The position numbers were made by a program, and so were the translations under genes. Positions 2,340 to 64,000 of a stretch of DNA of 64,000 nt are shown piece after piece. Location: contig NIVC01000267.1 of assembly GCA_002269645.1 (NCBI GenBank), forward strand, positions 186,001 through 250,000, in the 5' to 3' direction. Source of the stretch: Macrostomum lignano. Lineage: Eukaryota. Within the stretch, counting starts at the first letter, position 1. Every line of letters begins with the position of its first letter. Under the pieces are notes generated by a model. The model was not told the DNA's origin. It did no database searches and worked only from the letters and a program-made list of their open reading frames with translations.

Positions 2340-2617
2340 AATTTCTATGGGAAACTGGGGAGTTTCTATGAGAAACTGGGGAGTTTCTATGGGAAGCTGG
2401 GAAGTTTCTATGGGAAACTGCGAAGTTTATATGGGAAACCGGGAAGTTTCTATGGGAAACTGGGAAGTTTCTATGGAAAACTGGGAAGTTTCTATGGGAA
2501 ACTGGGAAGTTTCTATGGGAAACGGGGAAGTTTCTATGGGAAACTGGGGAGTTTCTATGGGAAACTGGTAGTTTCTATGAAAAGCTGGGGAATTTCTATG
2601 GGAAACTGGAAAGTTCC
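2340..2617. repeat. 21-bp minisatellite GGGAAACTGGGAAGTTTCTAT
   Basis: About 13 copies. Confidence 0.9.
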
Positions 2618-2915
2618 AATGGAATCTGAGGTGAATTTCAATGGGGATCTGAGGGAATTTCAATGGGAAACTGGAAAGTTCCAATGGAATCTGAGGTGAA
2701 TTTCAATGGGGATCTGAGGGAATTTCAATGGGGATCTGAGGGAATTTCAATGGGGATCTGAGGGAATTTCAATGGGGATCTGAGGGAATTTCAATGGGGA
2801 TCTGAGGGAATTTCATTAGGGATCTGAGGAAATTTCATTAGGGATCTGACGGAGCTTCAATGGGATCTGAGAGAGTTTCAATGGGGATCTGAGGGAAGTT
2901 CGATGGGGATCTGAG
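2618..2915. repeat. 22-bp minisatellite GGGATCTGAGGGAATTTCAATG
   Basis: Tandem copies abutting the LIM exon donor. Confidence 0.9.
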
Positions 2916-2928
2916 GCACGTCTCTCAC

Positions 2929-3300
2929 CCCTGGACTTGGCCGCCTCGTAGTCCTGCTTGCACATGAGCTTCTTGTCCTCCAGCAGGTAGAACTCATCTC
3001 CAGTGTTCAGCTGCCGGGCGCAGGTCTGGCAGGCGAAGCAGGCCAGGTGGTAAACGCTGTCCCCGGCCTTGCGGATCACCTGAGCCGGCGGTATGCCCTC
3101 GTTGCAGCCCGAGCACTTGGTGCCGAAACGGCGGAAGAAGTCGGCCTTGCACAGCAGCAGGCTGTCCTTGGTGAAGCACTTGCTGGTCAGGGGCGCCTTG
3201 CAGTCGGCGCAGCGAAGGCAGCGCGAGTGCCAGCAGCGCTCCAGGACGCGCAGGATCACCCGGTCCAGGATTCGCTCGTTGCAGCCGCCGCAGAACGGAG
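2929..3300 (-). CDS. Lhx3/4: Lhx3/4 exon encoding two LIM domains
   Basis: [33 protein letters not shown]...[72 protein letters not shown] matches the Lhx3/4 LIM1-LIM2 pattern. Acceptor ctctctcag at 3301; donor G|gtgaga at 2928. Confidence 0.95.
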
Positions 3301-3336
3301 CTGAGAGAGGGGCGGGGCCGGTTGCGGGTGTGTGAG

Positions 3337-4190
3337 AGTCTGATCTAATCTAGTTAGTGTCTGATCTCACCTAGCTAGTGTCTGATCTCACCTAGCTAGT
3401 GTCTGATCTCACCTAGCCAGTGTCTGATCTCACCTAGCTAGTGTCTGATCTCACCTAGCTAGTGTCTGATCTCACCTAGCTAGTGTCTGATCTCACCTAG
3501 CTAGTGTCTGATCTCACCTAGCTAGTGTCTGATCTCACCTATTTTGTGTCCAATCTCACCCAGTAAAGTGTCTGATCTCATCCAGTTAAGTGTCTGATCT
3601 CATCCAGTTAAGTGTCTGATCTCACCCAGTTAAGTGTCTGATCTCATCCAGTTAAGTGTCTGATCTCACCCAGTTAAGTGTCTGATCTCATCCAGTTAAG
3701 TGTCTGATCTCTTCCAGTTAAGTGTCTGATCTCATCCAGTTAAGTGTCTAATCTCATCCAGTTAAGTGTCTAATCTCATTCAGTTAAGTGTCTGATCTCA
3801 TCCAGTTTAGTGTCTAATCTCATCCAGTTAAGGGTGTGATCTCATCCAGTTAAGTGTCTAATCTCACCCAGTTAAGTGTCTAATCTCACCCAGTTAAGTG
3901 TCTGATTTCACCCAGTTAAGTGTCTGATTTCACCCAGTTAAGTGTCTGATCTCATCGAGTTAAGTGTCTGATCTCATCGAGTTAAGTGTCTGATCTCATC
4001 CAGTTAAGGGTCTGATCACATCCAGTTAAGTGCCTGATCTCATCCAGTAAAGTGTCTAATCTCATCCAGTTAAGGGTCTGATCTCATCCAGTTAAGGGTC
4101 TGATCTCATCCAGTAAAGTGTCTAATCTCATCCAGTTTGGTGTCTAATCTCCTCCAGCTGAGTTTCTGATCTCACCCTGTTAGTGTCCAA
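3337..4190. repeat. 21/22-bp minisatellite GTGTCTGATCTCACCTAGCTA grading into GTGTCTGATCTCATCCAGTTAA
   Basis: Direct reading; two sub-arrays. Confidence 0.92.
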
Positions 4191-12114: not shown

Positions 12115-12626
12115 TGACTCCCCTGAAAGGGAATAGTCTTAGATCAACTCTCTTCAACCTTGCAACCATTGTACAGAGCAGTGCGGAAAATATGAATAGT
12201 TGAAATGTTTTGATGCAAAAAGACGCGAAAATAAGAGTCGAACCTGCCGCTCCGGACTCTCTGTTCGTCTGGGACTCTCTGGCCAGAGGTAGGAGAAGAA
12301 GCCGCAAAAAAGCAGAAGAGGAAGCCTGGAGGAGCAGCAGCTTAGTGGGGAGCACCTGTAATTATCTCCCGTTCTGAAAGATAATTAGAGCAGAATTGGC
12401 CTGCCGGCAGCTTCCCCGCCTCATGGCAACCAGGTTGAAGGTAATAAGGGGCGGCCCGGACTCAAATTATCCCGGGGGTTGCAGATGTGGGATAAACTGA
12501 GACTATCGAACGGGAGCGGATCAAGCCAACAGCAACCAACAAGAAGCTGATGTTTCTTTTTGTTCATTTTTCGATTCCTAACAGCAGCCTTTGGTGCTTT
12601 CTAGACTTCGATAGCCATTGATAGAT

Positions 12627-29505: not shown

Positions 29506-30214
29506 ATATTAGATCCCATCTGTCTAACCAGGCTGTCTGACAGGCTGTCTAACCCCCCTCCCCAGTTTTATCCCAAATTGATTTTTCAGTCGCGGGTTCA
29601 CTGTGATGCAAGGACCAACAAGCAGGTAAAGCCTCCCATTGTTAACCTGATCCCTCTGTGCCAACTTTAGCCTCAAACTCAAGATTCCTCTCTCTCTTCC
29701 TTCAGCATCCCGCGCTGCATCCTGAGCAGCATTCCCCATCAACTCTCAATAGGGGATTTGTTTAGCTGCAAGCTGCAATCCCCTTAGAAAAATCTTACTT
29801 CTGTCTGCCGTCTAGGCCCCAGAATCAGTTTTTGCTCAGGTGAGCTTGAAGGTGTCGGATTGCACTGGGGCACCCAAAAACACGGAGGACCGGAGGGATT
29901 CTGGGGTGGCTGCCCCCCCCCCCCGGTGCAGCGCTGTATTTGCTTTGATTTCCTTCTACCAAGGGCTGGTTTGATGGCCCCTGTTTGAACTAATTAATTT
30001 TAAATGCGCCAACTGAAGTTGTGGCTGCTGCCTGAGCAATTTGTCCAGCTGTCGGGGGGGGGGGGTGGTGAATCCAACAGCCCTTGTAAATCAGCGACAA
30101 CTTTAAAAACTTGTTTCTGTTTTGCATTGAAGAACATGAAATATTTGTGACTGAAGCTTTTGTTTAACTAGCGATAGCTTGGACCTGACAACTTTGCATT
30201 CCTGCTGGCCTAGC

Positions 30215-30925
<711 letters not shown>

Positions 30926-31454
30926 CATCATTCGACTATCAGTCTATCTGTTTCTGCCTGCTTTCCTGCCAGGCCGTCTCTTCCATCCCCACCACTTTCA
31001 CGCTCCCCAATCCTCATTCAGACTCAGCCATCGGCAGTCCCGCCGCGCCATCGCAGGAAGCTGTTTGCGCAGCCCGCACCTGCTCGGCAACCCGACACCG
31101 CAGCGCCATCCAACGCAGGCAGCAAAACTCTGTTGAATGAGAAATTTGAGCACCGTCTGGTTTGAGTTGGTGGTGAGGGGAGGGGGGCGATGCTGTGGTT
31201 GCGCCAGATTTGCCAAACTCTGGTGTTGTTGCTGAGTTGACAAACGGCTGACGGAAGCAATCGGGCGGGCGGTCTCTAAACTGCCGCTATGCCAGCAGAG
31301 CTTTTGTTAAAAGCAAACGAAGGAAATGTTGAGTTAAGCAGCTGAAGCTGACTGTGTTGGAGGCGATTTTTTCGTTGGGAAAAATCTGATGGTTGGTGGT
31401 AGGAAGAGAATTGAAATGAGGGAGAGAGTGGTGGGAATAGGGAAAGTAGGGGAA

Positions 31455-33825: not shown

Positions 33826-34096
33826 TTTCGCTCTCTCCTCTCCATTTCTTTCTCCTGCAGCGGAGCCGCCCCCCTCCCACCAACCTCCGGTCCCGAGCGC
33901 GAAGAGCAAAAACTTTTAAAATCCAAGCGTTTACGCCGGCCATTGAAAAGCCTTGCAAACAAACCTGATAGCCTTCGCTTTGAAACTCGAGACAGCCGCT
34001 CTCTCGATCCTCAGGCTTAGACCAGGTAATCTTATCCTCTCGGTGCTTGACAATAGCAACTAGGGTTGTCTGTCTGGCCGTTGCACAGGTGGAATA

Positions 34097-34170
34097 ATGA
34101 TACAGGAGTTCGCTGGACCTGCGGTGCCCTACCACCATCAGCAGCAGCCGCCGCCTCCACCGCCGCCACC

Positions 34171-34209
<39 letters not shown>

Positions 34210-34779
34210 TCAACTGTCTCTGGGCTCTGGCGGATCCTTCGGCTTCACCCAGGAGCAGGTCGCCTGCGTTTGCGAAGTTCTTCAACAGAGCGGCAGCGTC
34301 GACCGTCTGGCCAGATTTCTCTGGTCGCTGCCGCAGTGCGACCAGCTGCACAAGAATGAGAGCGTCATCAAAGCCAAGGCCATGGTGGCCTTCCACAGGG
34401 GCAACTTCAAGGAGCTCTACAGGCTGGTGGAGAGCTACAGCTTCGCGCCGCAGAACCACGCCAGGCTGCAGGAGCTGTGGCTCAAGGCGCACTACATCGA
34501 GGCTGAGAAGCTGCGCGGCCGGCCCCTCGGAGCTGTAGGCAAGTACCGAGTCCGCAAGAAGTTCCCGCTGCCCCGGACCATCTGGGACGGCGAGGAGACC
34601 TCCTACTGCTTCAAGGAGAAGTCCAGAAATGTGCTGCGCGAGTGGTACACGCACAACCCCTACCCGTCACCAAGGGAGAAGCGAGAGCTGGCCGAGGCAA
34701 CCGGCCTCACCACCACCCAGGTGTCCAACTGGTTCAAGAACCGGAGACAGCGGGACCGGGCGAGTGACGTGAAGGACGG
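34097..34779 (+). CDS. Six1/2: Six1/2 (sine oculis) exon 1: SIX domain plus homeodomain
   Basis: [17 protein letters not shown]...[15 protein letters not shown]...[11 protein letters not shown]. The ETSY tetrapeptide assigns the Six1/2 class; K50 homeodomain; donor GG|gtgagt at 34780. Confidence 0.97.
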
Positions 34780-34807
34780 GTGAGTTGGGGATCCTTGTGG
34801 GCTCTCA

Positions 34808-35275: not shown

Positions 35276-35894
35276 TCTCAGTCCCTATAACATTTGCACT
35301 TTGAGATGTGAACAATAGTTGAATATTCAATAAAGAAAATTGAATGTTTTATATAGCAAATTGGCTACGGTGCCAAAAGAAAAAGCGAGTGAGAGAGAAA
35401 GAGAGTGGGAAATTGCTGAGATGAACCGGTAAAATTTATGTTGCAAATATTTCATACGCCCCCCTGTATAACAAACGGCTTAAATCGGCATGGCAAGCAA
35501 GTATAACAAATGTCGCTTTTGCCGCGCCATTACTTTCATGTGTTTTCTGTTTTGCTAACGCCTTCCCGTTAACTTTTTCAATCGGTTACAGTTGCTCCAG
35601 CGGCAGCTTAGTAGCGCCTAAGGTTTTTTGTAGCAAACTTACTTCTTTTGGTTATAATAATGTTAATGCGACTTCTCCATTTCTCCGCTCGTTCTTGTCG
35701 CTTCTGAAAGCAGAATTTCTGCCTCAATTTTTCGTTGCAACAATTAAATATTCATTTGTTTATTTGCTTGCCTTCATCTATTGCCCAATATTTTCTTCAT
35801 ATAACTTTGCTTGTACGAGTGGAAGAGGTGAGAATGCACTAGAAGATTAAGACAACCCAGAAATTGCATCAGTGGAGAATCCCAAGGAGAAAAA

Positions 35895-37308
35895 TACAGG
35901 GGAGAGATAGACAGGGGAGAAATAGACAGTGGAGAGATAGACAGGGGAGAGATAGACAGGGGAGAGATAGACAGGGGAGAGATAGATAGGGGAGAGATAG
36001 ACAGAGGAGAGATAGACAGGGGAGAAATAGACAGTGGAGAGATAGACAGGGGAGAGATAGACAGGGGAGAGATAGACAGGGGAGAGATAGACAGTGGAGA
36101 GATAGACAGGGGAGAGATAGACAGGGGAGAGATAGACAGTGGAGAGATAGACAGGGGAGAGATAGATAGGGGAGAGATAGACAGGGGAGAGATAGACAGG
36201 GGAGAGATAGACAGGGGAGAGATAGATAGGGGAGAGATAGACAGGGGAGAGATAGACAGGGGAGAGATAGATAGGGGAGAGATAGACAGGGGAGAGATAG
36301 ACAGGAGAGAGATAGACAGGGGAGACATAGACAGGGGAGATATAGACAGGGGAGAGATAGACAGGGGAGAGATAGACAGGGGAGAGATAGACAGGGGAGA
36401 GATAGACAGGGGAGAAATAGACAGTGGAGAGATAGACAGGGGAGAGATAGACAGGGGAGAGATAGACAGGGGAGAGATAGACAGGGGAGAGATAGACAGG
36501 GGAGAGATAGACAGGGGAGAAATAGACAGTGGAGAGATAGACAGGGGAGAGATAGACAGGGGAGAGATAGACAGGGGAGAGATAGACAGGGGAGAGATAG
36601 ACAGAGGAGAGATAGACAGGGGAGATATAGACAGGGGAGAGATAGACAGGGGAGAGATAGACAGGGGAGACATAGACAGGGGAGAAATAGACAGTGGAGA
36701 GATAGACAGGGGAGAGATAGACAGGGGAGAGATAGACAGGGGAGAGATAGACAGGGGAGAGATAGACAGAGGAGAGATAGACAGGGGAGATATAGACAGG
36801 GGAGAGATAGACAGGGGAGAGATAGACAGGGGAGAGATAGACAGGGGAGAGATAGACAGTGGAGAGATAGACAGGGGAGAGATAGACAGGGGAGAGATAG
36901 ACAGTGGAGAGATAGACAGGGGAGAGATAGATAGGGGAGAGATAGACAGGGGAGAGATAGACAGGGGAGAGATAGACAGTGGAGAGATAGACAGGGGAGA
37001 GATAGATAGGGGAGAGATAGACAGGGGAGAGATAGACAGGGGAGAGATAGACAGGGGAGAGATAGACAGGGGAGAGATAGACAGTGAGAGATAGACAGGC
37101 GAGAGATAGACAGGCGAGAGATAGACAGGGGGAGAGATAGACAGGGGAGAGATAGACAGGGGAGAGATAGACAGGGGAGAGATAGACAGGGGAGAGATAG
37201 ACAGGGGAGAGATAGACAGGGGAGAGATAGACAGGGAGAGATAGACAGGGGAGATAGATAGACAGGGGAGACAGGGGAGAGATAGACAGGGGAGAGATAG
37301 ACAGGGAA
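35895..37308. repeat. 15-bp minisatellite GACAGGGGAGAGATA
   Basis: About 94 copies. Confidence 0.97.
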
Positions 37309-37917
37309 GAGATGGCCAGAGGCCTGTCTCAAGCCAGGATGAAGACCCCAAACAAGCAGGCAGCAGCACGAAGAGCAGAATCAAGTAGTGGCATGGAGTG
37401 AATCGGAGAAAAGGAAGCGCGCTACAATATTAACGAAAAAATGTTAATCAATTAACAGCCCCCACCCGGCACAAGCGAGGCCGCAGTCCCGACTGTCACT
37501 CTATACAATAAATAAAGCTGCGTGTTGAAGGCACCAACCGTTTCTCTGCCTGGCGCAGAGTGGCACGAAGTGGTCAAAATGCTCTCTTATATTACGAGCC
37601 GTTGCTTGCGGTTACCGCAGCTCATTAATAAGGCTGAAATCGAGCAACCGACCCACGGCTGAACTCGGCAAGATGACACCGGGAGGGTAGCCTGAGTTGT
37701 AAGGGGGGGGGTCATCCGAAACCGCGTAGGAGCAATCAGAGTGTTTAAAGTGATTAAACTGTTTAATTAGCTATTTAAATTAGTGCCTTTTTATAACAAA
37801 TCTGATATGCGAGTAGAAAACTTACTATGAAATAACTTTGTTTTGGGCACATTGGTTCGTTTTTCGACTACTTGGATGGCCGACCATAATTAGTAACGAG
37901 TTTAGTATTAGTAATGC

Positions 37918-48482: not shown

Positions 48483-49250
48483 TTAGAAGTCTGGAAGCAG
48501 CGCGGCTCGCTCCCAATGGCTCCAGCCGCCGAAGTCCGGCATGGCGCCTCCGCCCCCGCCGCCGCATTCACCACTGTTGGCCCCCAAGCCGCAGTACATC
48601 GTTGAGGAGGCGCCACCGCCACCGCCGCCGCATCCGTTACTGTCACCGCCAAAGCCGCAGCACATCATCATTGCGGGGCCGCTGCCGCCGCAGCTGCCTC
48701 CGCCGCTGTCGCTGCCGAAACCGCAGCACATCTCGGAGCCGTTTGAGCAGCCCGGCTGCATGCCGAACTGCATGTCGCCTGACGCCAATGACATCTGCAT
48801 CGGCCAGCCGCTGACCTGCTGCTGCATGCCGTCCAATCCGGCCGACTGCGCCATACCGCAGCAGCCAAGTGCGCTGCACATTCCGCCGTTGCCGACGCCG
48901 CCGTCTCCGCCAAACATCTCATTGGCGTTCGACTGTTCTGATCGGTCCTGCTGCTGCTGCTGCTGGAACTGCATCATTAGAAAGTCGTTTGGCGTAGCCA
49001 TATTCATCTGGGGCATAAACTGCTGCTGTTGCTGCTGCTGTTGCTGTTGAAACTGCTCCATCATGTTTTGCTGCTGATAGTCAGAGCCATAGTAGAACTG
49101 CTGCGGAAGCATCAGGGTGCTGGCAGGGTACTGTTGCATTCCTTGCGACGGAAATCCGTCGTTATTATCCACGTTGCAGCCTCCTCCGCTGCAAGCCCCG
49201 TTGGCGCACTGAAAGCTCAGTCCCTGATTGAAGTTCCACGGCGGTTGCAT
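48483..49250 (-). CDS. Single-exon orphan, 255 aa Gln/Gly/Cys/Met-rich low-complexity protein
   Basis: ATG with an in-frame TGA 2 codons upstream; CAG/GGC-biased codons like the homeobox genes; three degenerate (M/Y)C(C)G(F/L)GxxSxxCGG repeats; possible ATTAAA signal at 48257-48262. Confidence 0.65.
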   Translation of the reverse strand: MQPPWNFNQGLSFQCANGACSGGGCNVDNNDGFPSQGMQQYPASTLMLPQQFYYGSDYQQQNMMEQFQQQQQQQQQQFMPQMNMATPNDFLMMQFQQQQQQDRSEQSNANEMFGGDGGVGNGGMCSALGCCGMAQSAGLDGMQQQVSGWPMQMSLASGDMQFGMQPGCSNGSEMCCGFGSDSGGGSCGGSGPAMMMCCGFGGDSNGCGGGGGGASSTMYCGLGANSGECGGGGGGAMPDFGGWSHWERAALLPDF

Positions 49251-50748
49251 AAATCAGCTGGCTGGGGCGTTTCGTCGAACTTTTAATCAACAGCTTTTCT
49301 TTCGGCTTTGGGCTTTCTTAAGAGCAGAGAGGCAAACTGGCAGAGGGTGCAGGCGGTGGTCAATTTAAATTTTTAATCTACACAACTACAATAGAGCTGT
49401 CAACGCAGATGAGCGCACGAAACAGGAGATGCAGAGATCTCGGCCTGCCATAGACAAAATGCGACAGTTGACAAGCATTATATGTAACTTAAGAGTGTAG
49501 ACTCTTCATAATTCTATTTACGATTAGAGATCAAATCACGTTGTCTAACGTAGATGTTAAATTGTGAGAACTCTGTCTCCTTAGTCTACTAAACCCTAAA
49601 GAAACACAAGTTAGTTAAACTAAAGTCAATTAACATGAAATAGCGTTTAGATGTCGAGAAATTATTACTTTCGGACGATATAAAATAAATGACAGAGAAA
49701 AACACTGTAGATGGCGACTGTACGTGCAAACGTCGATCTGGTATAATCAAAGCCAAATGTTCAGGTCCAAACTAATGATACAAATTAAATCCGCAGATCA
49801 GTTACCTTACACTCGAATATATAATTGAAATGATAGCAAATATTGTAGATATTGCAGATACTATAAGCATTAGCGAGTAACTAATCAATAAATAGTTGAT
49901 CCAAAAGTTTATTGTTAGACACAATCACAAAGGGCGCTAATACTATAAGCATTAGCGAGTAACTAATCAATAAATAGTTGATCCAAAAGACACAATCACA
50001 AAGGGCTTAAAAGCATTAGAAGCGCAGCAACAGCTCAATTTCAGAAACAGAATAATTCACCTAATAAAGGATATCGAAAAAAGGGAAGAACCTATCATTT
50101 TTAGAAAGGTTTAGTAAAATTAATTAGGCAAAAAAGTTTTAACTTTTTGTTAAAAGTTGTAAAAAGTTAAATTTTGCTTTTTCGAGAATTTTTTTACATC
50201 ATGGAACGTACTGTCAACTTAGGGTAGCTAGCCTAGCCTAACTTATGTCGAAGCATCACTACGTTGATTAGTTGACTAAGCCTTAGACATGACGGTATTT
50301 ATTGCTGATTCCTGATCACAAACTTTAAAAAACTTTTTTAATAGGCCTAACTACAAAAGTGGATAGAAAATAGGCCCGTGGCTTAATATAAAGTTCTCTT
50401 TTAATTTCATAAAAAGAAATTTGGCTTAGCACAAAGTAGCAAAGTATTGTATATGCTATAAAAACAAATTTTAGATAACTGACACTAGTAAGATATAGTT
50501 AATAGTGTGCAGTTAAGAAAATAATAAAGGTACAAGGAAATAAGTTCTTTTTTCATGCTTACTACTGCTTCAATTTTTTTAACCATGGTCAAAATTTTTG
50601 TATATTTGTACCATTTTTGCATCTAGTGCAAATTTGTGCTACACTACAGCCACTGAAACTAACCTAAGCTAAACTATAATTTAAACTAAGGCAATTATTA
50701 CTAAGCAAATATTTAATTTATAAAAATAATAAAACAAACTAAAGAATA

Positions 50749-52041
50749 CAAGGGGCACTATGAAAGTTTTTTGCTATATCTAAACAAAAGTAGCTATGTA
50801 GCTAAAATTTTCACAGCTTCTCAAAGTATTCTCCACCAGCCTGTATGCAGTGCCTTATCCTCTCAAACCAGGTGACAAAGCAGTGGTGCCACTTAGAAGT
50901 GGACACCCTTTTTACCATATTGTCAAATGCATCAGCAGCCTCCTCTGCAGTAAAAAATTGCTGGCCATGCAGCAAGTCCTTGACTTTAAGGAATAGAAAA
51001 AAGTCACATGGTGCTAAATTAGACAAGTATTGCAGGTGACTGGTCAGCTGCAGTCCCTGAGTCTGCAGAAACTGCATGTTGCCTAAGCCATGTGAGCACT
51101 TGCATTGTCCTGATGCAGTGTCAAGCCTTAGATACCTGACTTTGGATGTATCCTACTTAGACTATGGATGACCTATAGCAAGTAGACACCAGTATACTAG
51201 GCTGCAGTCACCGTGCATTGATCTAGCATCCGCACAGTTGCCACATGACCTGAGCAACAGAAAAAAGTTGCAACTATCTACTTGCCAGTGCTCCTGCCTT
51301 GCATAACCTTCATTGGTGGCACCTTGTCTAGAAACGCCCACACCTGCAACTGGCACTTGCACTCTAGCTTGTAGCAGTACACCTAAGTCTTGTCACATGT
51401 CACTATGTTGGCAACCACCTTTGACACTCCATTGCTATGTTTCTGTAGCATCTGGTAGCACTAATCAACCCTGGCCTGTTTCTGCTCAGGCTCTAACAGA
51501 TAGGGCACCTAGCAACTAGTCAGCTTGCATAAGCCAATGTGATTGTCAAGGATTTTGGCAATTGCTGGCAAATGGATGCCCAAGGATGCCTCAATCTTCT
51601 TGAAGGTTATCTGCCTGTCAGCTTCAACCAGCTGGCGAACACAAGCCACTGTTTCTGGTGTCGTGACAGTTGAAGGTTGGCCTGTATGCTACTCATCTTC
51701 CAATAAGTCTTGGCCATGACAAAACTTGTGGAACTAGTTGCTAATAGTTGCAAGCAATGCAGCTTCTGCAAAAGTAGCTGATAGCCTTTTGTGGCATTGG
51801 TGACATTCAAGGCTGCCGCAATAATCATGGCATGAAAATGCTTGCAAGTCAATTCTATGAGCTCTGCTAGAAAGTGGGCAGAGGTGCTGAAGTTATCTGG
51901 CTCTAGTGGCTAAAGGCTGCAAGATATTTAAGTGAAATTTTATCTAACATAGTCACATATATTGTTCTGTAAGCCTGTCAAAAATCAAGCTGATAAGACA
52001 AACAGCAGAGGTGTGGCTAAAAACTTTTATAATGACCCTTG
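50749..52041 (-). mobile_element. Full-length, inactivated mariner (Tc1/mariner, DD34D) DNA transposon, 1293 bp
   Basis: TA target sites at 50747-50748 and 52042-52043. TIRs CAAGGGGCACTATGAAAGTTTT vs reverse complement CAAGGGTCATTATAAAAGTTTT; transposase pseudogene inside. Confidence 0.93.
50811..51858 (-). pseudogene. Mariner transposase pseudogene
   Basis: Degraded motifs: IELTCKHFHAMI (MELTREHFRAMI type), C*VPY (RWVPH), VTCDKT*VY (TGDETW), HQDNASAH, YLSNLAPCDFFLF (YSPDLAPCDF), GEYFEKL*. 34 residues between the second and third Asp; 10 in-frame stops, 2 frameshifts. Confidence 0.93.
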
Positions 52042-53259
52042 TATAATTGCCAAACTAACATTGTTTTGAATAGGCTTAAATAAAAGCTATGATTATTATT
52101 TTATGTTTAATATAATATATGGCTATAAGAATTAAAAAAGTATAAAATTATCTTTCAACAGTTGTGTAGTTTTCTTGTTGCTTCTGGTCAAAGCATATTT
52201 TGCATTTTATTCTATAATATAAAATTCTAGTCAATACTCTAGACTTTAACCTAAGTTATATATATGATTTATAAATTATACATCAAAAAACATACACAAA
52301 GTCTACATATTTAGAATATGCTTAGGTTGCCTAAGTAATATCAATGCTTAATACCATAGCAAGAATATAATATTTCATTAGCTTCTAAAACAGTAAAGAT
52401 TAACTTATCTTGTACAATTATGGTATCTAAATTGATTTGAAATTCACTTAACTTTGGATAAAAGTTGAAATAAAAAGAGAAAACATTATATTGTTTAACA
52501 TAGTATTCAATTACTATTCAATTAGTACACAATAAGTCATGAAATATCTTTGCCAAATATATAAGTCAGCACTGCTCAGTGCAAGTAAGCTCTTTGTCTT
52601 TGAGAATTTTGTCTGGCCTTGAATTGGGGGGGGGGGCTTAAGCCCTCCCAATTCCAACCATGTAGTTTCAACACTGTCTTTGTTGCTTGAGTCCTTGATT
52701 CTATGGACTTAAGAGCTCCCCCTACATTGAAGGTTAAAATATTCACCTTAACATGAGCCCCCACCACCCAACCACAACGTGAATGTGGCATCAAAACTCT
52801 CTGTTGCTTAAGTCTCCAAATACATGTAGGGACTTAAGAGTTCCCCTCACTTTGAAACTGGCAACATTAATTCATCCCTACCCCATCAAATCAACAGCTC
52901 CAATGGCCTTTCAAGTCTCAGTTGAGAGGTATTACTAAATATGGAAACGGGATATGGCAAATATGTGTTCCCGTAACCAAATCTGTATCCGTATGCTTTG
53001 TCTAAAAACTTCCGTGTCTGCAACTTCCTGTAGTCATATCCATTGCTAGGGCGGAACTCTACTAACAATCTTGAAAAAAATTATTTTGTGTTCATGTTCA
53101 ACTATCAATATTTATACTTTGTAAATCTGAGAGTCTGCAAATTGAAGTCGAAACAAATAAGACAGAAAATTTCTTGAATAGAAGTTGATAGCAGCATAGA
53201 GAAGGCGGCGCTGCTGCTCTGCAGGTGTGAAGCAAATTGAAATTGGACTTGGAATTTGA

Positions 53260-53901
53260 ATGACGACCGCGGATGAGGCGGATGCCGAAGTCACGGCGCC
53301 ATCCAGCCAGTTCGCTGCCAGCATCAACGGCGACTCCGCTGTCGATGCCGATGCAGCCGACGAGGTGCAGCTCCGACAAAGACGGCGTCCTGACGAGAGC
53401 TCGCCCGCCGGCGACATCCCCTCGGCCGTCGAGGACATCAAGGCGGAGCGCGCATCGGCTGACGACAGCCAGCGCCAGGTGTCGATAACTCGGCCAGTGT
53501 CCATTCTGAAATCTCCGTCGCAGGCGTCGCTGCTGCTCGACTCGACATCGTCGCCGCCTTTGGCAGCCTCGCCGTCTGGCGCAACGACGCCTTCGTCAGC
53601 AGCGTCGGCCTCCAAGCGGGTTCGATTCGCCAAGAAGATCGAGCACCGCTACTGGTTCCGCCCGGATCCCAGCCAGCATGCGCACCATCATCAGTACTAC
53701 TATCAGCGGCAGCAGCAACAGGAGCTGGCCGGCTCGGTCGGCCTGCTGACCCTGCTGACTCTGGCGTTTGCTCTCGTGATGGCCCTGGCCATGACGGCCT
53801 CGTATTGTCGGGCCAAACCCGACCTCTGCGCCGCGTACGCCGGCGGGCCCTACTGGCCGGAGGCCACCGTGCGGCTTGCCAAAGGTTTGCGGCTGATCTG
53901 A
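53260..53901 (+). CDS. Membrane-anchored protein with SILK and KRVRF PP1-docking motifs, consortin-C-terminus-like
   Basis: GC-rich 213 aa ORF; VSILKSP, SKRVRFA, hydrophobic LLTLLTLAFALVMALAMTASYC followed by a second Cys. Could be the last exon of a longer gene. Confidence 0.7.
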   Translation: MTTADEADAEVTAPSSQFAASINGDSAVDADAADEVQLRQRRRPDESSPAGDIPSAVEDIKAERASADDSQRQVSITRPVSILKSPSQASLLLDSTSSPPLAASPSGATTPSSAASASKRVRFAKKIEHRYWFRPDPSQHAHHHQYYYQRQQQQELAGSVGLLTLLTLAFALVMALAMTASYCRAKPDLCAAYAGGPYWPEATVRLAKGLRLI

Positions 53902-54049
53902 CGCATTGGTCCCGCAGATCTTTTGCGTAACAGTTTGCAGTTCCTCTTCAATGCCTCTGTCTGCACCCTCTGTACTTTATGGGACCTGTTCGCGCCTGCC
54001 ATTCCCATGCTTTCTCCCGGGTCTGACAATTTCGGTGTAGCTGGAAACT

Positions 54050-54645
54050 TGTGTCTGACAATTGTGCTTGATGTGACTGACAATTGTGATTAATGTGACT
54101 GACAATTGTGATTAATGTGACTGACAATTGTGATTGATGTGACTGACAATTGTGATTGATGTGACTGACAATTGTGATTAATGTGACTGACAATTGTGAT
54201 TGATGTGTCTGACAATTGTGATTGATGTGTCTGACAATTGTGCTTGATGTGACTGACAATTGTGATTGATGTGACTGACAATTGTGATTGATGTGTCTGA
54301 CAATTGTGTTTGATGTGTCTGACAATTGTGATTAATGTGACTGACAATTGTGATTAATGTGACTGACAATTGTGATTGATGTGACTGACAATTGTGCTTG
54401 ATGTGACTGACAATTGTGATTAATGTGACTGACAATTGTGATTGATGTGTCTGACAATTGTGCTTGATGTGTCTGACAATTGTGCTTGATGTGTCTGACA
54501 ATTGTGATTGATGTGACTGACAATTGTGCTTGATGTGACTGACAATTGTGCTTGATGTGTCTGACAATTGTGATTGATGTGACTGATAGTCGTGACTGAT
54601 GTGACTGACAATTGTGCTTGATGTGACTGACAATTGTGACTGATG
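54050..54645. repeat. 22-bp minisatellite GACTGACAATTGTGATTGATGT
   Basis: Direct reading. Confidence 0.93.
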
Positions 54646-61440: not shown

Positions 61441-62312
61441 GATCAGCCAATTCGCTAATAGTTCAAGCCTTTAAACAGTTCAAACACCTGGTTTTTAGTT
61501 TCTAATCCTCTAGCTCGAGAACCGTTTTGCTCAAACTCTAAATCTATTCGAAATGATTTTATCCAGGTGTTACTTCACTCGATGTAAGATTTACAGTTCA
61601 TCGAATTCTTTAAACCAACCTTAATCTAAACCAACTCAACCCAGCCCTGAATACAGTGGGATGAATGCCTTCGGGGCTTGAGCACACCAGTCCAGCTGGT
61701 CATACGCCACCATCGCCGCTGTTCCTTGCTTTTTTTCCCCAACCGCTACCCCTCTCCCAAGTTTGAACTGTTAATCAAGGGGGACCCCCTTGTCCGTCAT
61801 TTGGCCATCAAACTTGTCACTGATAGCAGGGCGGGCAGGCAGTATCCACCTGGAGCTGCATACTGGAGACTGTCCTGCCCTGTTCCCATATGGACCCCGG
61901 GGATAGCCTCTGCTCATTAGCCTCGCGAGCATGTGATGCAACACCTTAACTAACCCGCGCCCCGTGCGCATTCTCGGTATCCTTGTAATTAAAATACTCA
62001 ACTATGTATGAGCTCATTGTAAAATTTGAATCCAATTTTGTTCGCTAATATAGAGTAAAGCTATTTTCCAGCTACTCGACAGATTGGGGGCGCGAGAAAC
62101 TCGACAGTTCGCCGAGCTTATCTGGGCGAATCATCTTGGCGGCTCGCCTTTCGGCTGGTCTGAAAGCGGACAAGAATTCACTGGGGCGCTGCTCGATGGG
62201 AGAATGCAAGGTCGTCAGCTTTCACCGGAACTGCAGGGCCATGCCAGCCCAGCAGATCCGGTTGCTTCCGGCTCTTGCAGATCCTGCGGCACCCCATCTG
62301 CTCAGGGAGCCT

Positions 62313-63385
<1,073 letters not shown>

Positions 63386-64000
63386 GCATAAAAATACTCC
63401 CATTTCAGTTGCAAACATTTCCCCAAATGGAGTTGCTACAATAATTTAAAATATGCAAATTTATGCGCCGTCAACAAGTCAGTGACTCGCTCCAGCCGCA
63501 CGCAGCCGCAGGCACTGAATGCACTGGACCCAGTCGCGAGCCTAATGACCCGGATACATGCAGAAAGTCGAACGCCCTTTGTTTCTCCGGCTCGGCGGAA
63601 GTCATAAACAAACAAGAAAGCCCCCAGCAGCTGCTGTAGAGGCGACCTGGGCACTGGGAGATCGGGGAGTCCCCAATCGGCTTCCCTCCGAAACCCGAGA
63701 ACCGCCTGCCCGGCCGCCCGGACTCCGGCAAGTTTTTAGCGGCGCATAGCAACTGAAAAAATCGAAAGTAGGAATTGATGAGGGGTTGGGGGTGGTGACA
63801 AACAATTTCGTCACACCTTGGCTCAGCCGCCTCGTCACTCGGGTGCTTCTGTCTCCATCGTCCGTCGCCAACCGACTGTCTCGCCTTTGCCCTCCTCAGC
63901 CACCCCAGCCCAGAGTCGTCGAATGGGTAAGCTGATACCCCCCCCCTCCCTAACTCGGAGATTTCCGAAGGGCGAAAGAAGAAGGCGCGATAGAGAGGGG

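What the first reader, a model, noticed from the sequence alone, without database searches (positions are those of the whole stretch)
50749..52041. Mariner transposon destroyed by RIP-like CpG and CpA transition hypermutation in an animal genome
Seen: one unbroken minus-strand frame (about 51810-51078) holds 10 stops at 51734, 51689, 51509, 51461, 51383, 51278, 51197, 51173, 51128 and 51083: 9 TAG, 1 TAA, no TGA. Five fall on conserved Trp positions (SN*F, C*VP, VD*C, KT*VY, A*Y), each TGG>TAG, i.e. CpA>TpA on the other strand. Other motif changes fit the same spectrum on both strands: start ATG>ATA, CAG>TAG, CCA>CTA, WVPH CAT>TAT, Arg CGN>TGN/CAN, YSPD>YLSN. I count only 6 CpG in 1293 bp, against very roughly 50-60 expected. 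TIRs, TSDs, length and D34D spacing are intact with only 2 frameshifts, so this does not look like ordinary ageing. Established: CpA>TpA hypermutation of repeats is the hallmark of fungal RIP (RID/DIM-2), and DNMT3-type enzymes also methylate CpA. Inference: a repeat-targeted methylation/deamination genome-defence system. I know of no description of RIP in animals. Ancestral codons are inferred from family motifs, not from a real consensus.
Basis: partly seen in the sequence, partly recalled or inferred. Interest (0 to 1): 0.9.

Follow-up and report, generated by a model that had tools for sequence, protein, structure and literature searches.

The report
Methylation-type C-to-T erosion of a mariner
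One copy of a mariner transposon in what is almost certainly the flatworm Macrostomum lignano has been wrecked by a local, still-running cytosine-to-thymine mutation process whose sequence preference (CG, then CAG) looks like the footprint of DNA methylation rather than fungal-style RIP.

Summary
The element at 50749-52041 has TA duplications, 6 CpG (63 expected from composition, 88 in the family consensus) and the ten listed stops.

Against 20 sibling copies from the same genome it carries 158 C>T/G>A changes, 9 A>G/T>C and 24 transversions. Equally old siblings keep 69-87 CpG.

The window's duplicated locus on contig C2178 lets the changes be timed. Since that duplication the two element copies have diverged 5.5% (65 transitions, 3 transversions). 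DNA 250-1500 bp to the left diverged about 1%, and transition excess tapers over roughly 1 kb of flank. So the process is local, ongoing, and independent in each copy.

Its preference is CG >> CAG > CTG ~ CAH > CC ~ CTH. It acts on both strands without strand runs. Unaffected copies show a flat spectrum.

Near-identical duplicated copies elsewhere are untouched, the RIP indices fail, and the only C5-methyltransferase genes found are DNMT1, DNMT2 and DNMT3. UHRF1-like SRA genes are also present.

Best reading: patchy, dense germline methylation of some transposon insertions followed by deamination. This is a known kind of decay, but it is undescribed in flatworms and has an unusual non-CpG component. 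Fungal-type RIP is not supported.

The parts
50749..52041 (-). Degenerate Tc1/mariner-type DNA transposon copy (transposase on the minus strand), C>T hypermutated
   Evidence: tblastn of the sibling ORF matches 50858-51909 at 66% identity. The sibling ORF hits Pfam HTH_48 and DDE_3. 20+ copies are present in the genome. 158 of 191 differences from the family consensus are C>T/G>A.
50747..50748 (.). TA target-site duplication, left
   Evidence: Read directly from the sequence.
52042..52043 (.). TA target-site duplication, right
   Evidence: Read directly from the sequence.
50749..50774 (+). Left terminal inverted repeat (CAAGGGGCACTATGAAAGTTTTTTGC)
   Evidence: 21 of 26 positions match the reverse complement of the right end. 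Mismatches are G/T, C/T, G/A, T/A and T/C.
52016..52041 (-). Right terminal inverted repeat
51078..51810 (-). Single former reading frame holding the ten stops (9 TAG, 1 TAA)
   Evidence: Ancestral codons were read from the aligned sibling L005.
50499..52750 (.). CpG-free patch: the element plus about 250 bp to the left and about 700 bp to the right. Transition-biased divergence tapers across the flanks.
   Evidence: 0 CpG in the flank parts. Transitions per G/C site between the two duplicated loci: 0.108 in the element; 0.048, 0.071, 0.034 and 0.028 in adjacent flank; 0.004-0.013 further left; 0.003-0.008 in the GC-rich stretch to the right.
48483..49253 (-). GC-rich, CpG-normal open frame to the left of the patch. 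It is unaffected and nearly identical between the duplicated loci.
   Evidence: 70 CpG in 48501-49300 and 0 differences between the duplicated loci there.
53260..53901 (+). GC-rich, CpG-normal open frame to the right of the patch, unaffected
   Evidence: 58 CpG in 53201-53650, with 1 transition.

Best explanation
This is one insertion of a mariner family in a genome that is almost certainly Macrostomum lignano. It lies in a small chromatin patch of about 2.2 kb whose cytosines are densely methylated in the germline, probably de novo by the single DNMT3 and maintained by DNMT1 with UHRF1. Methylated cytosines deaminate to thymine, so the patch loses C on both strands in proportion to how well each context is methylated: nearly every CG, then CAG, then other CA and CTG, and little elsewhere.

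Shown:
- the mutation spectrum;
- its confinement to some copies and their close surroundings;
- its continuation after the locus was duplicated;
- the presence of the methylation enzyme genes.

Inferred:
- that methylation is the cause;
- that it is present in the germline at these patches;
- that it is nucleated by the transposon, for example by small-RNA or heterochromatin targeting, as a genome defence.
For: Spectrum.
- 158 C>T/G>A against 9 A>G/T>C and 24 transversions. The strands are balanced, 75 to 83.
- There are no strand-coherent runs: 90 observed against 80 expected.

Context.
- Of 88 consensus CpGs, 71 became TG or CA, 7 became TA and 5 survive.
- Pooled over three hypermutated insertions, C>T per site is CAG 68/242 (28%), CTG 28/240 (12%), CAH 35/324 (11%), CC 24/412 (6%) and CTH 14/260 (5%). 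CAG against CAH gives Fisher p = 2e-7.
- Ten unaffected copies are flat at 3.4-4.7%, and their CpG is only 6.1%.
- This order matches published DNMT3 specificity: CpA is the next-best substrate after CpG, and DNMT3B prefers G at +1 in non-CpG targets (PMC7335073).

Local and ongoing.
- Window 30-64 kb is colinear with contig C2178.
- Between the two loci the element differs 5.5% (65 ts: 3 tv). The adjacent 49940-50711 differs 1.2% (5:4) and 52042-54050 differs 1.6% (18:14).
- Polarised with the family consensus, lineage-specific C>T since the duplication are: in the window copy CpG 10/30, CpA 17/245, CpC 3/117, CpT 3/189, with A>G 1/641; in the C2178 copy 4/30, 14/245, 4/117, 4/189, with A>G 2/640.
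- In ordinary DNA between the same two loci, CpG is barely more mutable than other C: 1-5% against 1.5-3%.

Copy-specific and not age-related.
- Hypermutated and clean copies occur in each of three subfamilies, with similar counts of non-C>T changes.

Enzyme genes.
- DNMT1 exon: PDB best hit DNMT1, E = 2e-64.
- DNMT3 exons with intact motifs IV, VI and VIII: PDB best hit DNMT3A, E = 9e-21.
- SRA-domain (UHRF1-like) genes are present.

Literature.
- M. lignano retains DNMT1 and DNMT3 and has low global 5mC (PMC11292947; PMC10658182).
Against: - No methylation data were available here, so methylation at this locus is inferred only from its mutational footprint.
- Global 5mC in adult M. lignano is reported as low, and reviews state there is no clear transposon targeting in Spiralia.
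- Germline non-CpG methylation strong enough to leave a footprint is not known in invertebrates (my own knowledge).
- C>T is also raised about 2-4 fold at CC and CTH, where DNMT3 activity should be very low.
- The estimated CpG rate excess (about 10-40 fold over ordinary C between the duplicated loci) rests on 14 events.
- What selects these insertions is unknown. A clean young copy (L004/L005) sits right beside a CpG-free AT-rich stretch.
- At the L021/L027 locus the transition-biased zone includes at least 740 bp of flank, so the transposon may be a passenger in a methylated patch rather than its cause.
Confidence: 0.62

Rival explanations
1. An enzyme-driven mutator aimed at heterochromatic or transposon patches: a RIP-like mechanism in outcome, but not triggered by duplication. 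A methyltransferase-fold enzyme, or a partner deaminase, actively converts C or 5mC to U or T at its target contexts.
For: - The preference is set by the 3' neighbour (CG, CAG), as for methyltransferases.
- All C contexts are raised, including CC and CTH.
- The CpG loss rate since the duplication is high: 14 of 30 sites against 1-5% elsewhere.
- The end products are AT-rich CpG-free blocks, which are common in the 328 kb I held: half of the windows under 35% GC have CpG O/E below 0.2.
- A review notes that RIP-like use of methylation 'may well have evolved' outside fungi (PMC9246332).
Against: - Intermediate copies (L006, L013, L016) and steady post-duplication accumulation fit a slow passive process.
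- The rate excess is within the range known for methylated CpG in mammals (my own knowledge).
- No extra methyltransferase class was found and there were no NAD1 or APOBEC_N hits.
Confidence: 0.17
2. True RIP as in Neurospora and other fungi: duplicated sequences are detected by homology before meiosis and both copies are riddled with C>T by a RID-type enzyme.
For: - C>T on both strands with a CpA component.
- TpA/ApT rises from 0.58 to 0.96.
- The mutation leaks into flanks.
Against: - Duplicated copies 99-99.5% identical stay clean, with ts:tv of 8:4, 11:2 and 2:4. Much of this genome is duplicated (PMC5730564).
- CpG, not CpA, is the main target.
- (CpA+TpG)/(ApC+GpT) is 1.69 and the composite RIP index is -0.73.
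- There are no strand-coherent runs.
- Only DNMT1, DNMT2 and DNMT3 were found.
Confidence: 0.03
3. Editing by an AID/APOBEC-like single-strand DNA cytosine deaminase.
For: Strong C>T excess with few other changes.
Against: - The specificity lies on the 3' side (CG, CAG), not at the 5' TC/CC/WRC positions.
- There is only a mild 5' effect: G disfavoured, and T>A>C>G at CpG.
- The strands are balanced and interspersed.
- A cut-and-paste DNA transposon has no obligate single-strand or cDNA stage, and the mutations arose in place after the locus duplicated.
- There were no NAD1 or APOBEC_N matches. This is a weak negative, because the search is exon-by-exon and the NAD1 model had no positive control.
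Confidence: 0.04
4. No special process: an older copy, or a regionally AT-biased mutation regime, or an assembly or contamination artefact.
For: - The element lies in AT-rich DNA.
- C>T is the commonest change in all copies.
Against: - Non-C>T changes give the same age as the clean copies.
- Ts:tv is 65:3 inside the element against about 1:1 outside.
- The control copies have a flat context spectrum.
- The same insertion, with 116 shared and 59 private C>T changes, is present on two separate contigs flanked by animal genes: Six1/2-type and LIM-homeobox exons.
Confidence: 0.04

Closest known systems
Methylation-driven CpG decay of transposons in vertebrates, and of methylated transposons in some invertebrates (cnidarians, PMC8857917)
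   Same: - CpG>TpG/CpA on both strands.
- CpG O/E falls towards zero in silenced copies.
- DNMT1, DNMT3 and UHRF1 genes are present.
- Accumulation is gradual.
   Different: - Here most of the genome's CpGs are not hypermutable.
- Only some insertions and small patches are affected.
- There is a clear non-CpG (CAG) component, and all cytosines are raised.
- It has not been described in flatworms. Reviews say methylation patterns in free-living flatworms are unknown (PMC9246332).
Repeat-induced point mutation (RIP) of ascomycete fungi (RID/Masc1, DIM-2)
   Same: - C>T on both strands that destroys transposon reading frames with stop codons.
- It leaks into flanks.
- It produces AT-rich blocks.
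- A methyltransferase-type 3' context preference that includes CpA.
   Different: - It is not triggered by duplication.
- The order is CpG >> CpA, the reverse of Neurospora.
- The RIP indices are not met.
- There is no RID-like gene.
- It is slow and copy-specific.
CpG/TCG-targeted hypermutation of repeats reported in some basidiomycete fungi (recalled from memory, not checked here)
   Same: Transposon-directed C>T at CpG with a 5' T preference. Here TCG is 0.78 per site against GCG 0.28.
   Different: That is a fungal system of unknown enzyme. Here the 5' effect may simply decide which strand of a doomed CpG mutates first.
Non-CpG (CpA) methylation by mammalian DNMT3A/3B in oocytes, ES cells and neurons (PMC7335073)
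   Same: The context order CG >> CA, with CAG favoured and CT and CC low.
   Different: That phenomenon is known as an epigenetic mark in vertebrate cells. Here it is only inferred, from a germline mutational footprint in a flatworm.
Mos1/Himar1-type mariner transposons (Tc1/mariner superfamily)
   Same: - About 1.3 kb long, with TA duplication and short terminal inverted repeats.
- One transposase gene with an HTH_48 DNA-binding domain and a DDE/D catalytic domain.
- 34 residues lie between the D of HQDNA and the D of APCDFF in the sibling ORF.
   Different: This copy is dead, with 11 stops and 2 frameshifts. Pfam matched DDE_3 rather than Transposase_1, and the subfamily was not determined.

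Membership tests
Tc1/mariner DNA transposon | TA target-site duplication and terminal inverted repeats | tested here: met
   TA lies on both sides. The termini match at 21 of 26 positions.
Tc1/mariner DNA transposon | Transposase with a Mos1-type helix-turn-helix domain and a DDE/D catalytic domain | tested here: met
   The sibling ORF hits HTH_48 (E = 6e-9) and DDE_3 (E = 4e-7). The window copy aligns to that ORF at 66% identity.
Tc1/mariner DNA transposon | DD34D spacing of the catalytic residues | tested here: inconclusive
   Counting by hand in the sibling ORF gives 34 residues between the D of HQDNAS and the D of APCDFF, but only 29 to the D of YSPD. Which D is catalytic was not tested.
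Fungal RIP | Triggered by sequence duplication: all copies above about 80% identity are mutated | tested here: not met
   L004/L005, L007/L008 and L010/L011 are 99-99.5% identical pairs with CpG O/E 0.75-0.92 and normal ts:tv.
Fungal RIP | Dinucleotide indices: TpA/ApT > 0.89, (CpA+TpG)/(ApC+GpT) < 1.03, composite index > 0 | tested here: not met
   The values are 0.96, 1.69 and -0.73. Only the first is met.
Fungal RIP | RID/Masc1- or DIM-2-type cytosine methyltransferase gene | tested here: not met
   All 12 PF00145 matches fall into DNMT1, DNMT2 and DNMT3 groups. The search is exon-wise and could miss a divergent gene.
Fungal RIP | C>T transitions on both strands that create stops in repeats | tested here: met
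   75 C>T and 83 G>A, with 11 stops.
5mC-deamination decay of methylated DNA | Excess C>T at CpG on both strands with TpG/CpA enrichment | tested here: met
   Of 88 consensus CpGs, 71 became TG or CA and 7 became TA. TpG O/E is 1.65 and CpA O/E is 1.42.
5mC-deamination decay of methylated DNA | Maintenance and de novo methyltransferase genes present | tested here: met
   DNMT1, DNMT3 and SRA-domain genes are present.
5mC-deamination decay of methylated DNA | The locus is actually methylated in the germline | not testable with these tools
   No methylome data were available. The paper with bisulfite data (PMC4603488) is not held.
AID/APOBEC editing | 5'-neighbour motif (TC, CC or WRC) and strand-coordinated clusters | tested here: not met
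   The specificity is on the 3' side. The runs test shows no clustering by strand.

The most novel reading that the evidence does not exclude
A flatworm has an active, methyltransferase-linked cytosine mutator. It is directed at selected transposon insertions and their immediate chromatin and destroys them by C>T at CG and CAG, turning them into AT-rich CpG-free blocks. This would be a functional analogue of fungal RIP in an animal, but aimed by chromatin or small RNA rather than by duplication sensing.
Probability: 0.15. Interest if true: 0.85.

Novelty: new variant of a known kind. Interest (0 to 1): 0.52.

Why it matters
Reviews state that the genomic pattern of DNA methylation in free-living flatworms is unknown, and that spiralian animals show no clear targeting of transposons by methylation.

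This locus and its siblings give a sequence-only footprint that says otherwise. Most CpGs in this genome are not hypermutable, but small patches around some transposon insertions lose nearly every CG and many CAG. They are still losing them, independently, in duplicated copies of the same locus.

If methylomes confirm it, Macrostomum would be:
- a tractable regenerating animal in which transposon-directed de novo methylation can be studied by RNAi and transgenesis;
- possibly a case of germline non-CpG methylation outside vertebrates.

The duplicated genome also provides a built-in clock for measuring the mutational cost of methylation. The finding does not establish RIP in animals.

Tried and rejected
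- A wider random sample of the genome could not be fetched. Genome-wide statements therefore rest on about 328 kb of held sequence.
- The CpG-free flank beside the clean copy L005 proved to be mostly unique AT-rich DNA plus a 280-bp AT-rich repeat. That repeat has too few CpGs to be informative.
- I compared the two arms of a 569-bp palindromic MITE that sits 46 bp from the element in the C2178 copy, hoping to detect spreading. It gave differences in both directions and no conclusion.
- Pfam NAD1 and APOBEC_N searches of the genome found nothing. The NAD1 model had no positive control, so this is a weak negative.
- The paper with the only reported M. lignano bisulfite data (PMC4603488) is not in the library.
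- The three-homeolog locus L050-52 cannot be strictly polarised without an outgroup, so only ts:tv and divergence were used.
- A shared history of hypermutated copies was considered. L021, L024 and L027 are one insertion in three duplicated loci. L001 and L021 share more non-CpG C>T than chance (31 against 13 expected) and belong to one subfamily with the clean copy L003. Some of their mutations may therefore be shared or parallel. The post-duplication, lineage-specific counts do not depend on this.
- The family consensus was used only inside scripts to tabulate substitutions and was not printed.
Full report
**What is at the coordinates.**
- Window 50749-52041 is a 1293-bp Tc1/mariner-type element. 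It is flanked by TA on each side, and its ends begin CAAGGG and match at 21 of 26 positions.
- It holds 6 CpG where base composition predicts 63 (O/E 0.09). TpG (1.65) and CpA (1.42) are enriched, and TpA is not (0.79).

**Where the window comes from.**
- The window is G000:C267:186001-250000, in a 764,410,778-base, 5269-contig genome.
- It carries animal developmental genes: a Six1/2-type homeobox exon and a LIM-homeobox exon.
- The size and contig count match the published Macrostomum lignano assembly Mlig_3_7 (764,424,962 bp, 5270 scaffolds). That assembly is described as rich in simple repeats and highly redundant because of extra duplicated chromosomes (PMC5730564).
- I treat this identification as very likely but not proven.
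- It explains why most loci I looked at exist in two or three slightly diverged copies.

**A real consensus instead of inferred codons.**
- A search of the genome with the element found more than 20 copies.
- Full-length siblings have GC 53-57% and 56-87 CpG (O/E 0.63-0.92). This copy has GC 44%.
- One sibling (L005) has an uninterrupted 356-aa frame with Pfam HTH_48 and DDE_3 domains.
- Codon by codon against it, five stops are Trp TGG>TAG. The others are two Gln CAG>TAG, one Gln CAA>TAG, one Glu GAG>TAG and one Arg CGA>TAA.
- Against the majority consensus of CpG-rich copies, the window copy has 191 substitutions: 75 C>T, 83 G>A, 9 A>G/T>C and 24 transversions.
- Of 88 consensus CpGs, 36 are now CA, 35 TG, 7 TA and 5 remain.
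- By changes other than C>T, this copy (33-34) is no older than siblings that keep their CpGs (L003 38-39, L010 43-46, L007 60-61). Age is therefore not the cause.

**The duplicated locus dates and localises the process.**
- Window 30-64 kb is colinear with contig C2178, and the same insertion is present there (L002).
- Between the two loci the element differs by 5.5%, with 65 transitions and 3 transversions. On the left, 49940-50711 differs by 1.2% (5:4). On the right, 52042-54050 differs by 1.6% (18:14).
- In 200-bp bins the transition excess starts and ends at the element.
- Normalised per G/C site, the transition rate is 0.108 in the element and 0.048, 0.071, 0.034 and 0.028 in the next roughly 1 kb of AT-rich, CpG-free flank. 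It is 0.004-0.013 further left and 0.003-0.008 in the GC-rich stretch to the right. So the rate tapers rather than stopping dead.
- Polarising with the family consensus gives the changes since the duplication:

| Lineage | CpG | CpA | CpC | CpT | A>G | Transversions |
|---|---|---|---|---|---|---|
| Window copy | 10/30 | 17/245 | 3/117 | 3/189 | 1/641 | 3 |
| C2178 copy | 4/30 | 14/245 | 4/117 | 4/189 | 2/640 | 0 |

- The process is therefore cytosine-specific, acts in place, has continued independently in both loci, and leaves other mutation classes at background.
- In ordinary DNA between the same two loci, CpG sites are hardly more mutable than other G/C sites: 1-5% against 1.5-3%. Most of this genome's CpGs behave as unmethylated.

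**Only some copies are hit.**
- Adding fragments of further copies shows a bimodal pattern.
- Three insertions are fully hypermutated: L001/L002, L014, and L021/L024/L027 (one insertion at three duplicated loci). Their ratio of C>T to all other changes is 3.2-4.6.
- Three insertions are partly hypermutated: L006, L013 and L016/17/19 (ratio 1.3-2.1).
- About ten insertions are clean (ratio 0.4-1.1).
- Diagnostic non-C>T differences define three subfamilies, and each contains both hypermutated and clean members.
- Duplicated clean copies that are 99-99.5% identical (L004/L005, L007/L008, L010/L011) show only 0.5-1% divergence with ordinary ts:tv. Duplication as such does not trigger the process.

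**The signature.**
- C>T and G>A are interspersed at random along the element: 90 runs against 80 expected. This argues against strand-coordinated editing bursts.
CpA against CpC+CpT gives p = 6e-6, 5e-4 and 7e-3 in three insertions. It resolves into a CAG preference.
- C>T per site, (CG):

| Context | Three hypermutated insertions, pooled | Ten clean copies |
|---|---|---|
| CG | about 49% (window copy; saturated) | 6.1% |
| CAG | 28% | 3.4% |
| CTG | 12% | 4.2% |
| CAH | 11% | 4.3% |
| CC | 6% | 4.7% |
| CTH | 5% | 3.7% |

- The same order holds for the clean, lineage-specific post-duplication events: CAG 15/150, CAH 16/347, CTG 5/153, CC 7/237, CTH 2/235.
- At CpG the 5' neighbour order is T>A>C>G.
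- A preference set by the 3' neighbours is what cytosine-5 methyltransferases show. For mammalian DNMT3 enzymes, CpA is the next-best substrate after CpG, and DNMT3B favours G at +1 in non-CpG targets, that is CAG (PMC7335073).

**Enzyme genes.**
- All PF00145 matches in the genome fall into three groups, each present two or three times.
- DNMT1: a BAH domain plus the catalytic domain, with PDB best hit DNMT1 at E = 2e-64.
- DNMT2.
- DNMT3: PDB best hit DNMT3A at E = 9e-21, with motifs IV, VI and VIII intact.
- SRA-domain (UHRF1-like) genes and uracil/thymine glycosylase superfamily genes are present.
- No RID/DIM-2-like extra class appeared, and Pfam NAD1 and APOBEC_N found nothing. The last is a weak negative.
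- The literature agrees that M. lignano keeps DNMT1 and DNMT3 and has low global 5mC. It says methylation patterns in free-living flatworms are unknown and that transposon targeting is not evident in Spiralia.

**Wider context in the held sequence.**
- In about 328 kb of held DNA, half of the non-repetitive 500-bp windows under 35% GC have CpG O/E below 0.2. Windows above 55% GC all lie at 0.4-1.2.
- At the L021/L027 locus the transition-dominated divergence (39 ts: 12 tv) also covers at least 740 bp of AT-rich CpG-free flank.
- At another locus (L050-52), a distant mariner-like remnant and its AT-rich surroundings are CpG-free. They diverge 4.2% (ts:tv 2.2) between three duplicated copies, against 1.1% (0.4) in adjacent GC-rich DNA.
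- The phenomenon therefore looks like patches of a few kilobases, often containing transposons, that erode towards AT-rich CpG-free sequence.

**Interpretation.**
- The best-supported mechanism is dense germline cytosine methylation of particular patches, followed by deamination of 5-methylcytosine. DNMT3 would act de novo with its CG >> CAG > other preference, and DNMT1/UHRF1 would maintain the CG methylation.
- The spectrum, locality, timing and gene content are shown. Methylation itself, its germline presence and the targeting mechanism are inferred.
- Spontaneous deamination may suffice. The CpG excess of roughly 10-40 fold over ordinary cytosines is of the order known for methylated CpG in mammals (my own knowledge), but it rests on 14 events.
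- An active, enzyme-catalysed mutator cannot be excluded, and I give it about 0.15-0.2.

**Why not RIP.**
- Fungal-type RIP fails three defining tests: dependence on duplication, the dinucleotide indices (0.96, 1.69, -0.73), and a RID-type gene.
The claim of RIP in an animal does not.

**Verdict.** This is a genuine, well-delimited and still-active hypermutation patch. It is most likely the footprint of patchy transposon-associated methylation in a flatworm, with an unusual CAG component. That makes it a new variant of a known kind of decay. It is moderately interesting, and directly testable with a methylome.

Noticed in passing
window 34064-34783 (+) and 2816-3349 (-): Exons of a Six1/2-type homeobox gene (Six domain plus homeodomain) and of a LIM-homeobox gene. 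Both are GC-rich and CpG-normal.
   Followed up: no
window 12600-16300, 21000-24100, 30200-31000, 35800-37400, 62300-63400 and others: Very long mini- and microsatellite arrays make up a large share of the window. One of them (22001-24000) has no C at all on the + strand. They cause strong GC and AT skews.
   Followed up: no
C2178 counterpart of window 50702 and 50813 (L002:31-599 and about L002:716-1500): Two MITE insertions are present only in the duplicated locus. One is a 569-bp palindromic element with a 9-bp duplication (AAGCAAATA), 46 bp left of the mariner. The other is a roughly 790-bp AT-rich element with ends GGCTCATTCCATATAAG, inserted inside the mariner. So transposition has continued since the duplication.
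   Followed up: partly
L004/L005 (G000:C717 and C3075), flank next to the mariner copy: A young, CpG-rich mariner copy with an uninterrupted frame sits directly beside about 1.2 kb of unique AT-rich DNA with 1-3 CpG (O/E 0.03-0.1). This DNA is 97-98% identical among three duplicated loci. Proximity to a CpG-free block does not by itself deplete a copy.
   Followed up: partly
L021/L024/L027 (G000:C2979, C1742, C10): This is one hypermutated, internally interrupted mariner insertion present at three duplicated loci. C2979 and C1742 are 99.9% identical, but C10 differs by about 11%, mostly by transitions and also in 740 bp of flank.
   Followed up: partly
L050-L052 (G000:C608, C3046, C1018), locus positions about 2450-3200: A remnant of a distantly related Tc1/mariner transposase (24% identity, E = 1.6e-5) is also nearly free of CpG at GC 0.41-0.45. 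This suggests that a second family is affected.
   Followed up: partly
L001 versus L021 (alignment of copies): The two hypermutated insertions of subfamily A share 31 non-CpG C>T sites where 13 are expected, and 73% of their CpG outcomes agree. Either the context hot spots are strong, or a partly mutated copy was mobilised before both insertions.
   Followed up: partly
G000 C3325/C866/C112, C33/C2943/C2045, C305/C2545/C3236: DNMT1, DNMT2 and DNMT3 each occur at three loci, in keeping with the duplicated karyotype. Their introns are filled with minisatellites.
   Followed up: partly
G000, about 15 further loci (e.g. C1872:15321-16384, C373:12633-13694): A related mariner family, about 71% identical to this one, has many copies of about 1063 bp. 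They could not be fetched, so their CpG state is unknown.
   Followed up: no
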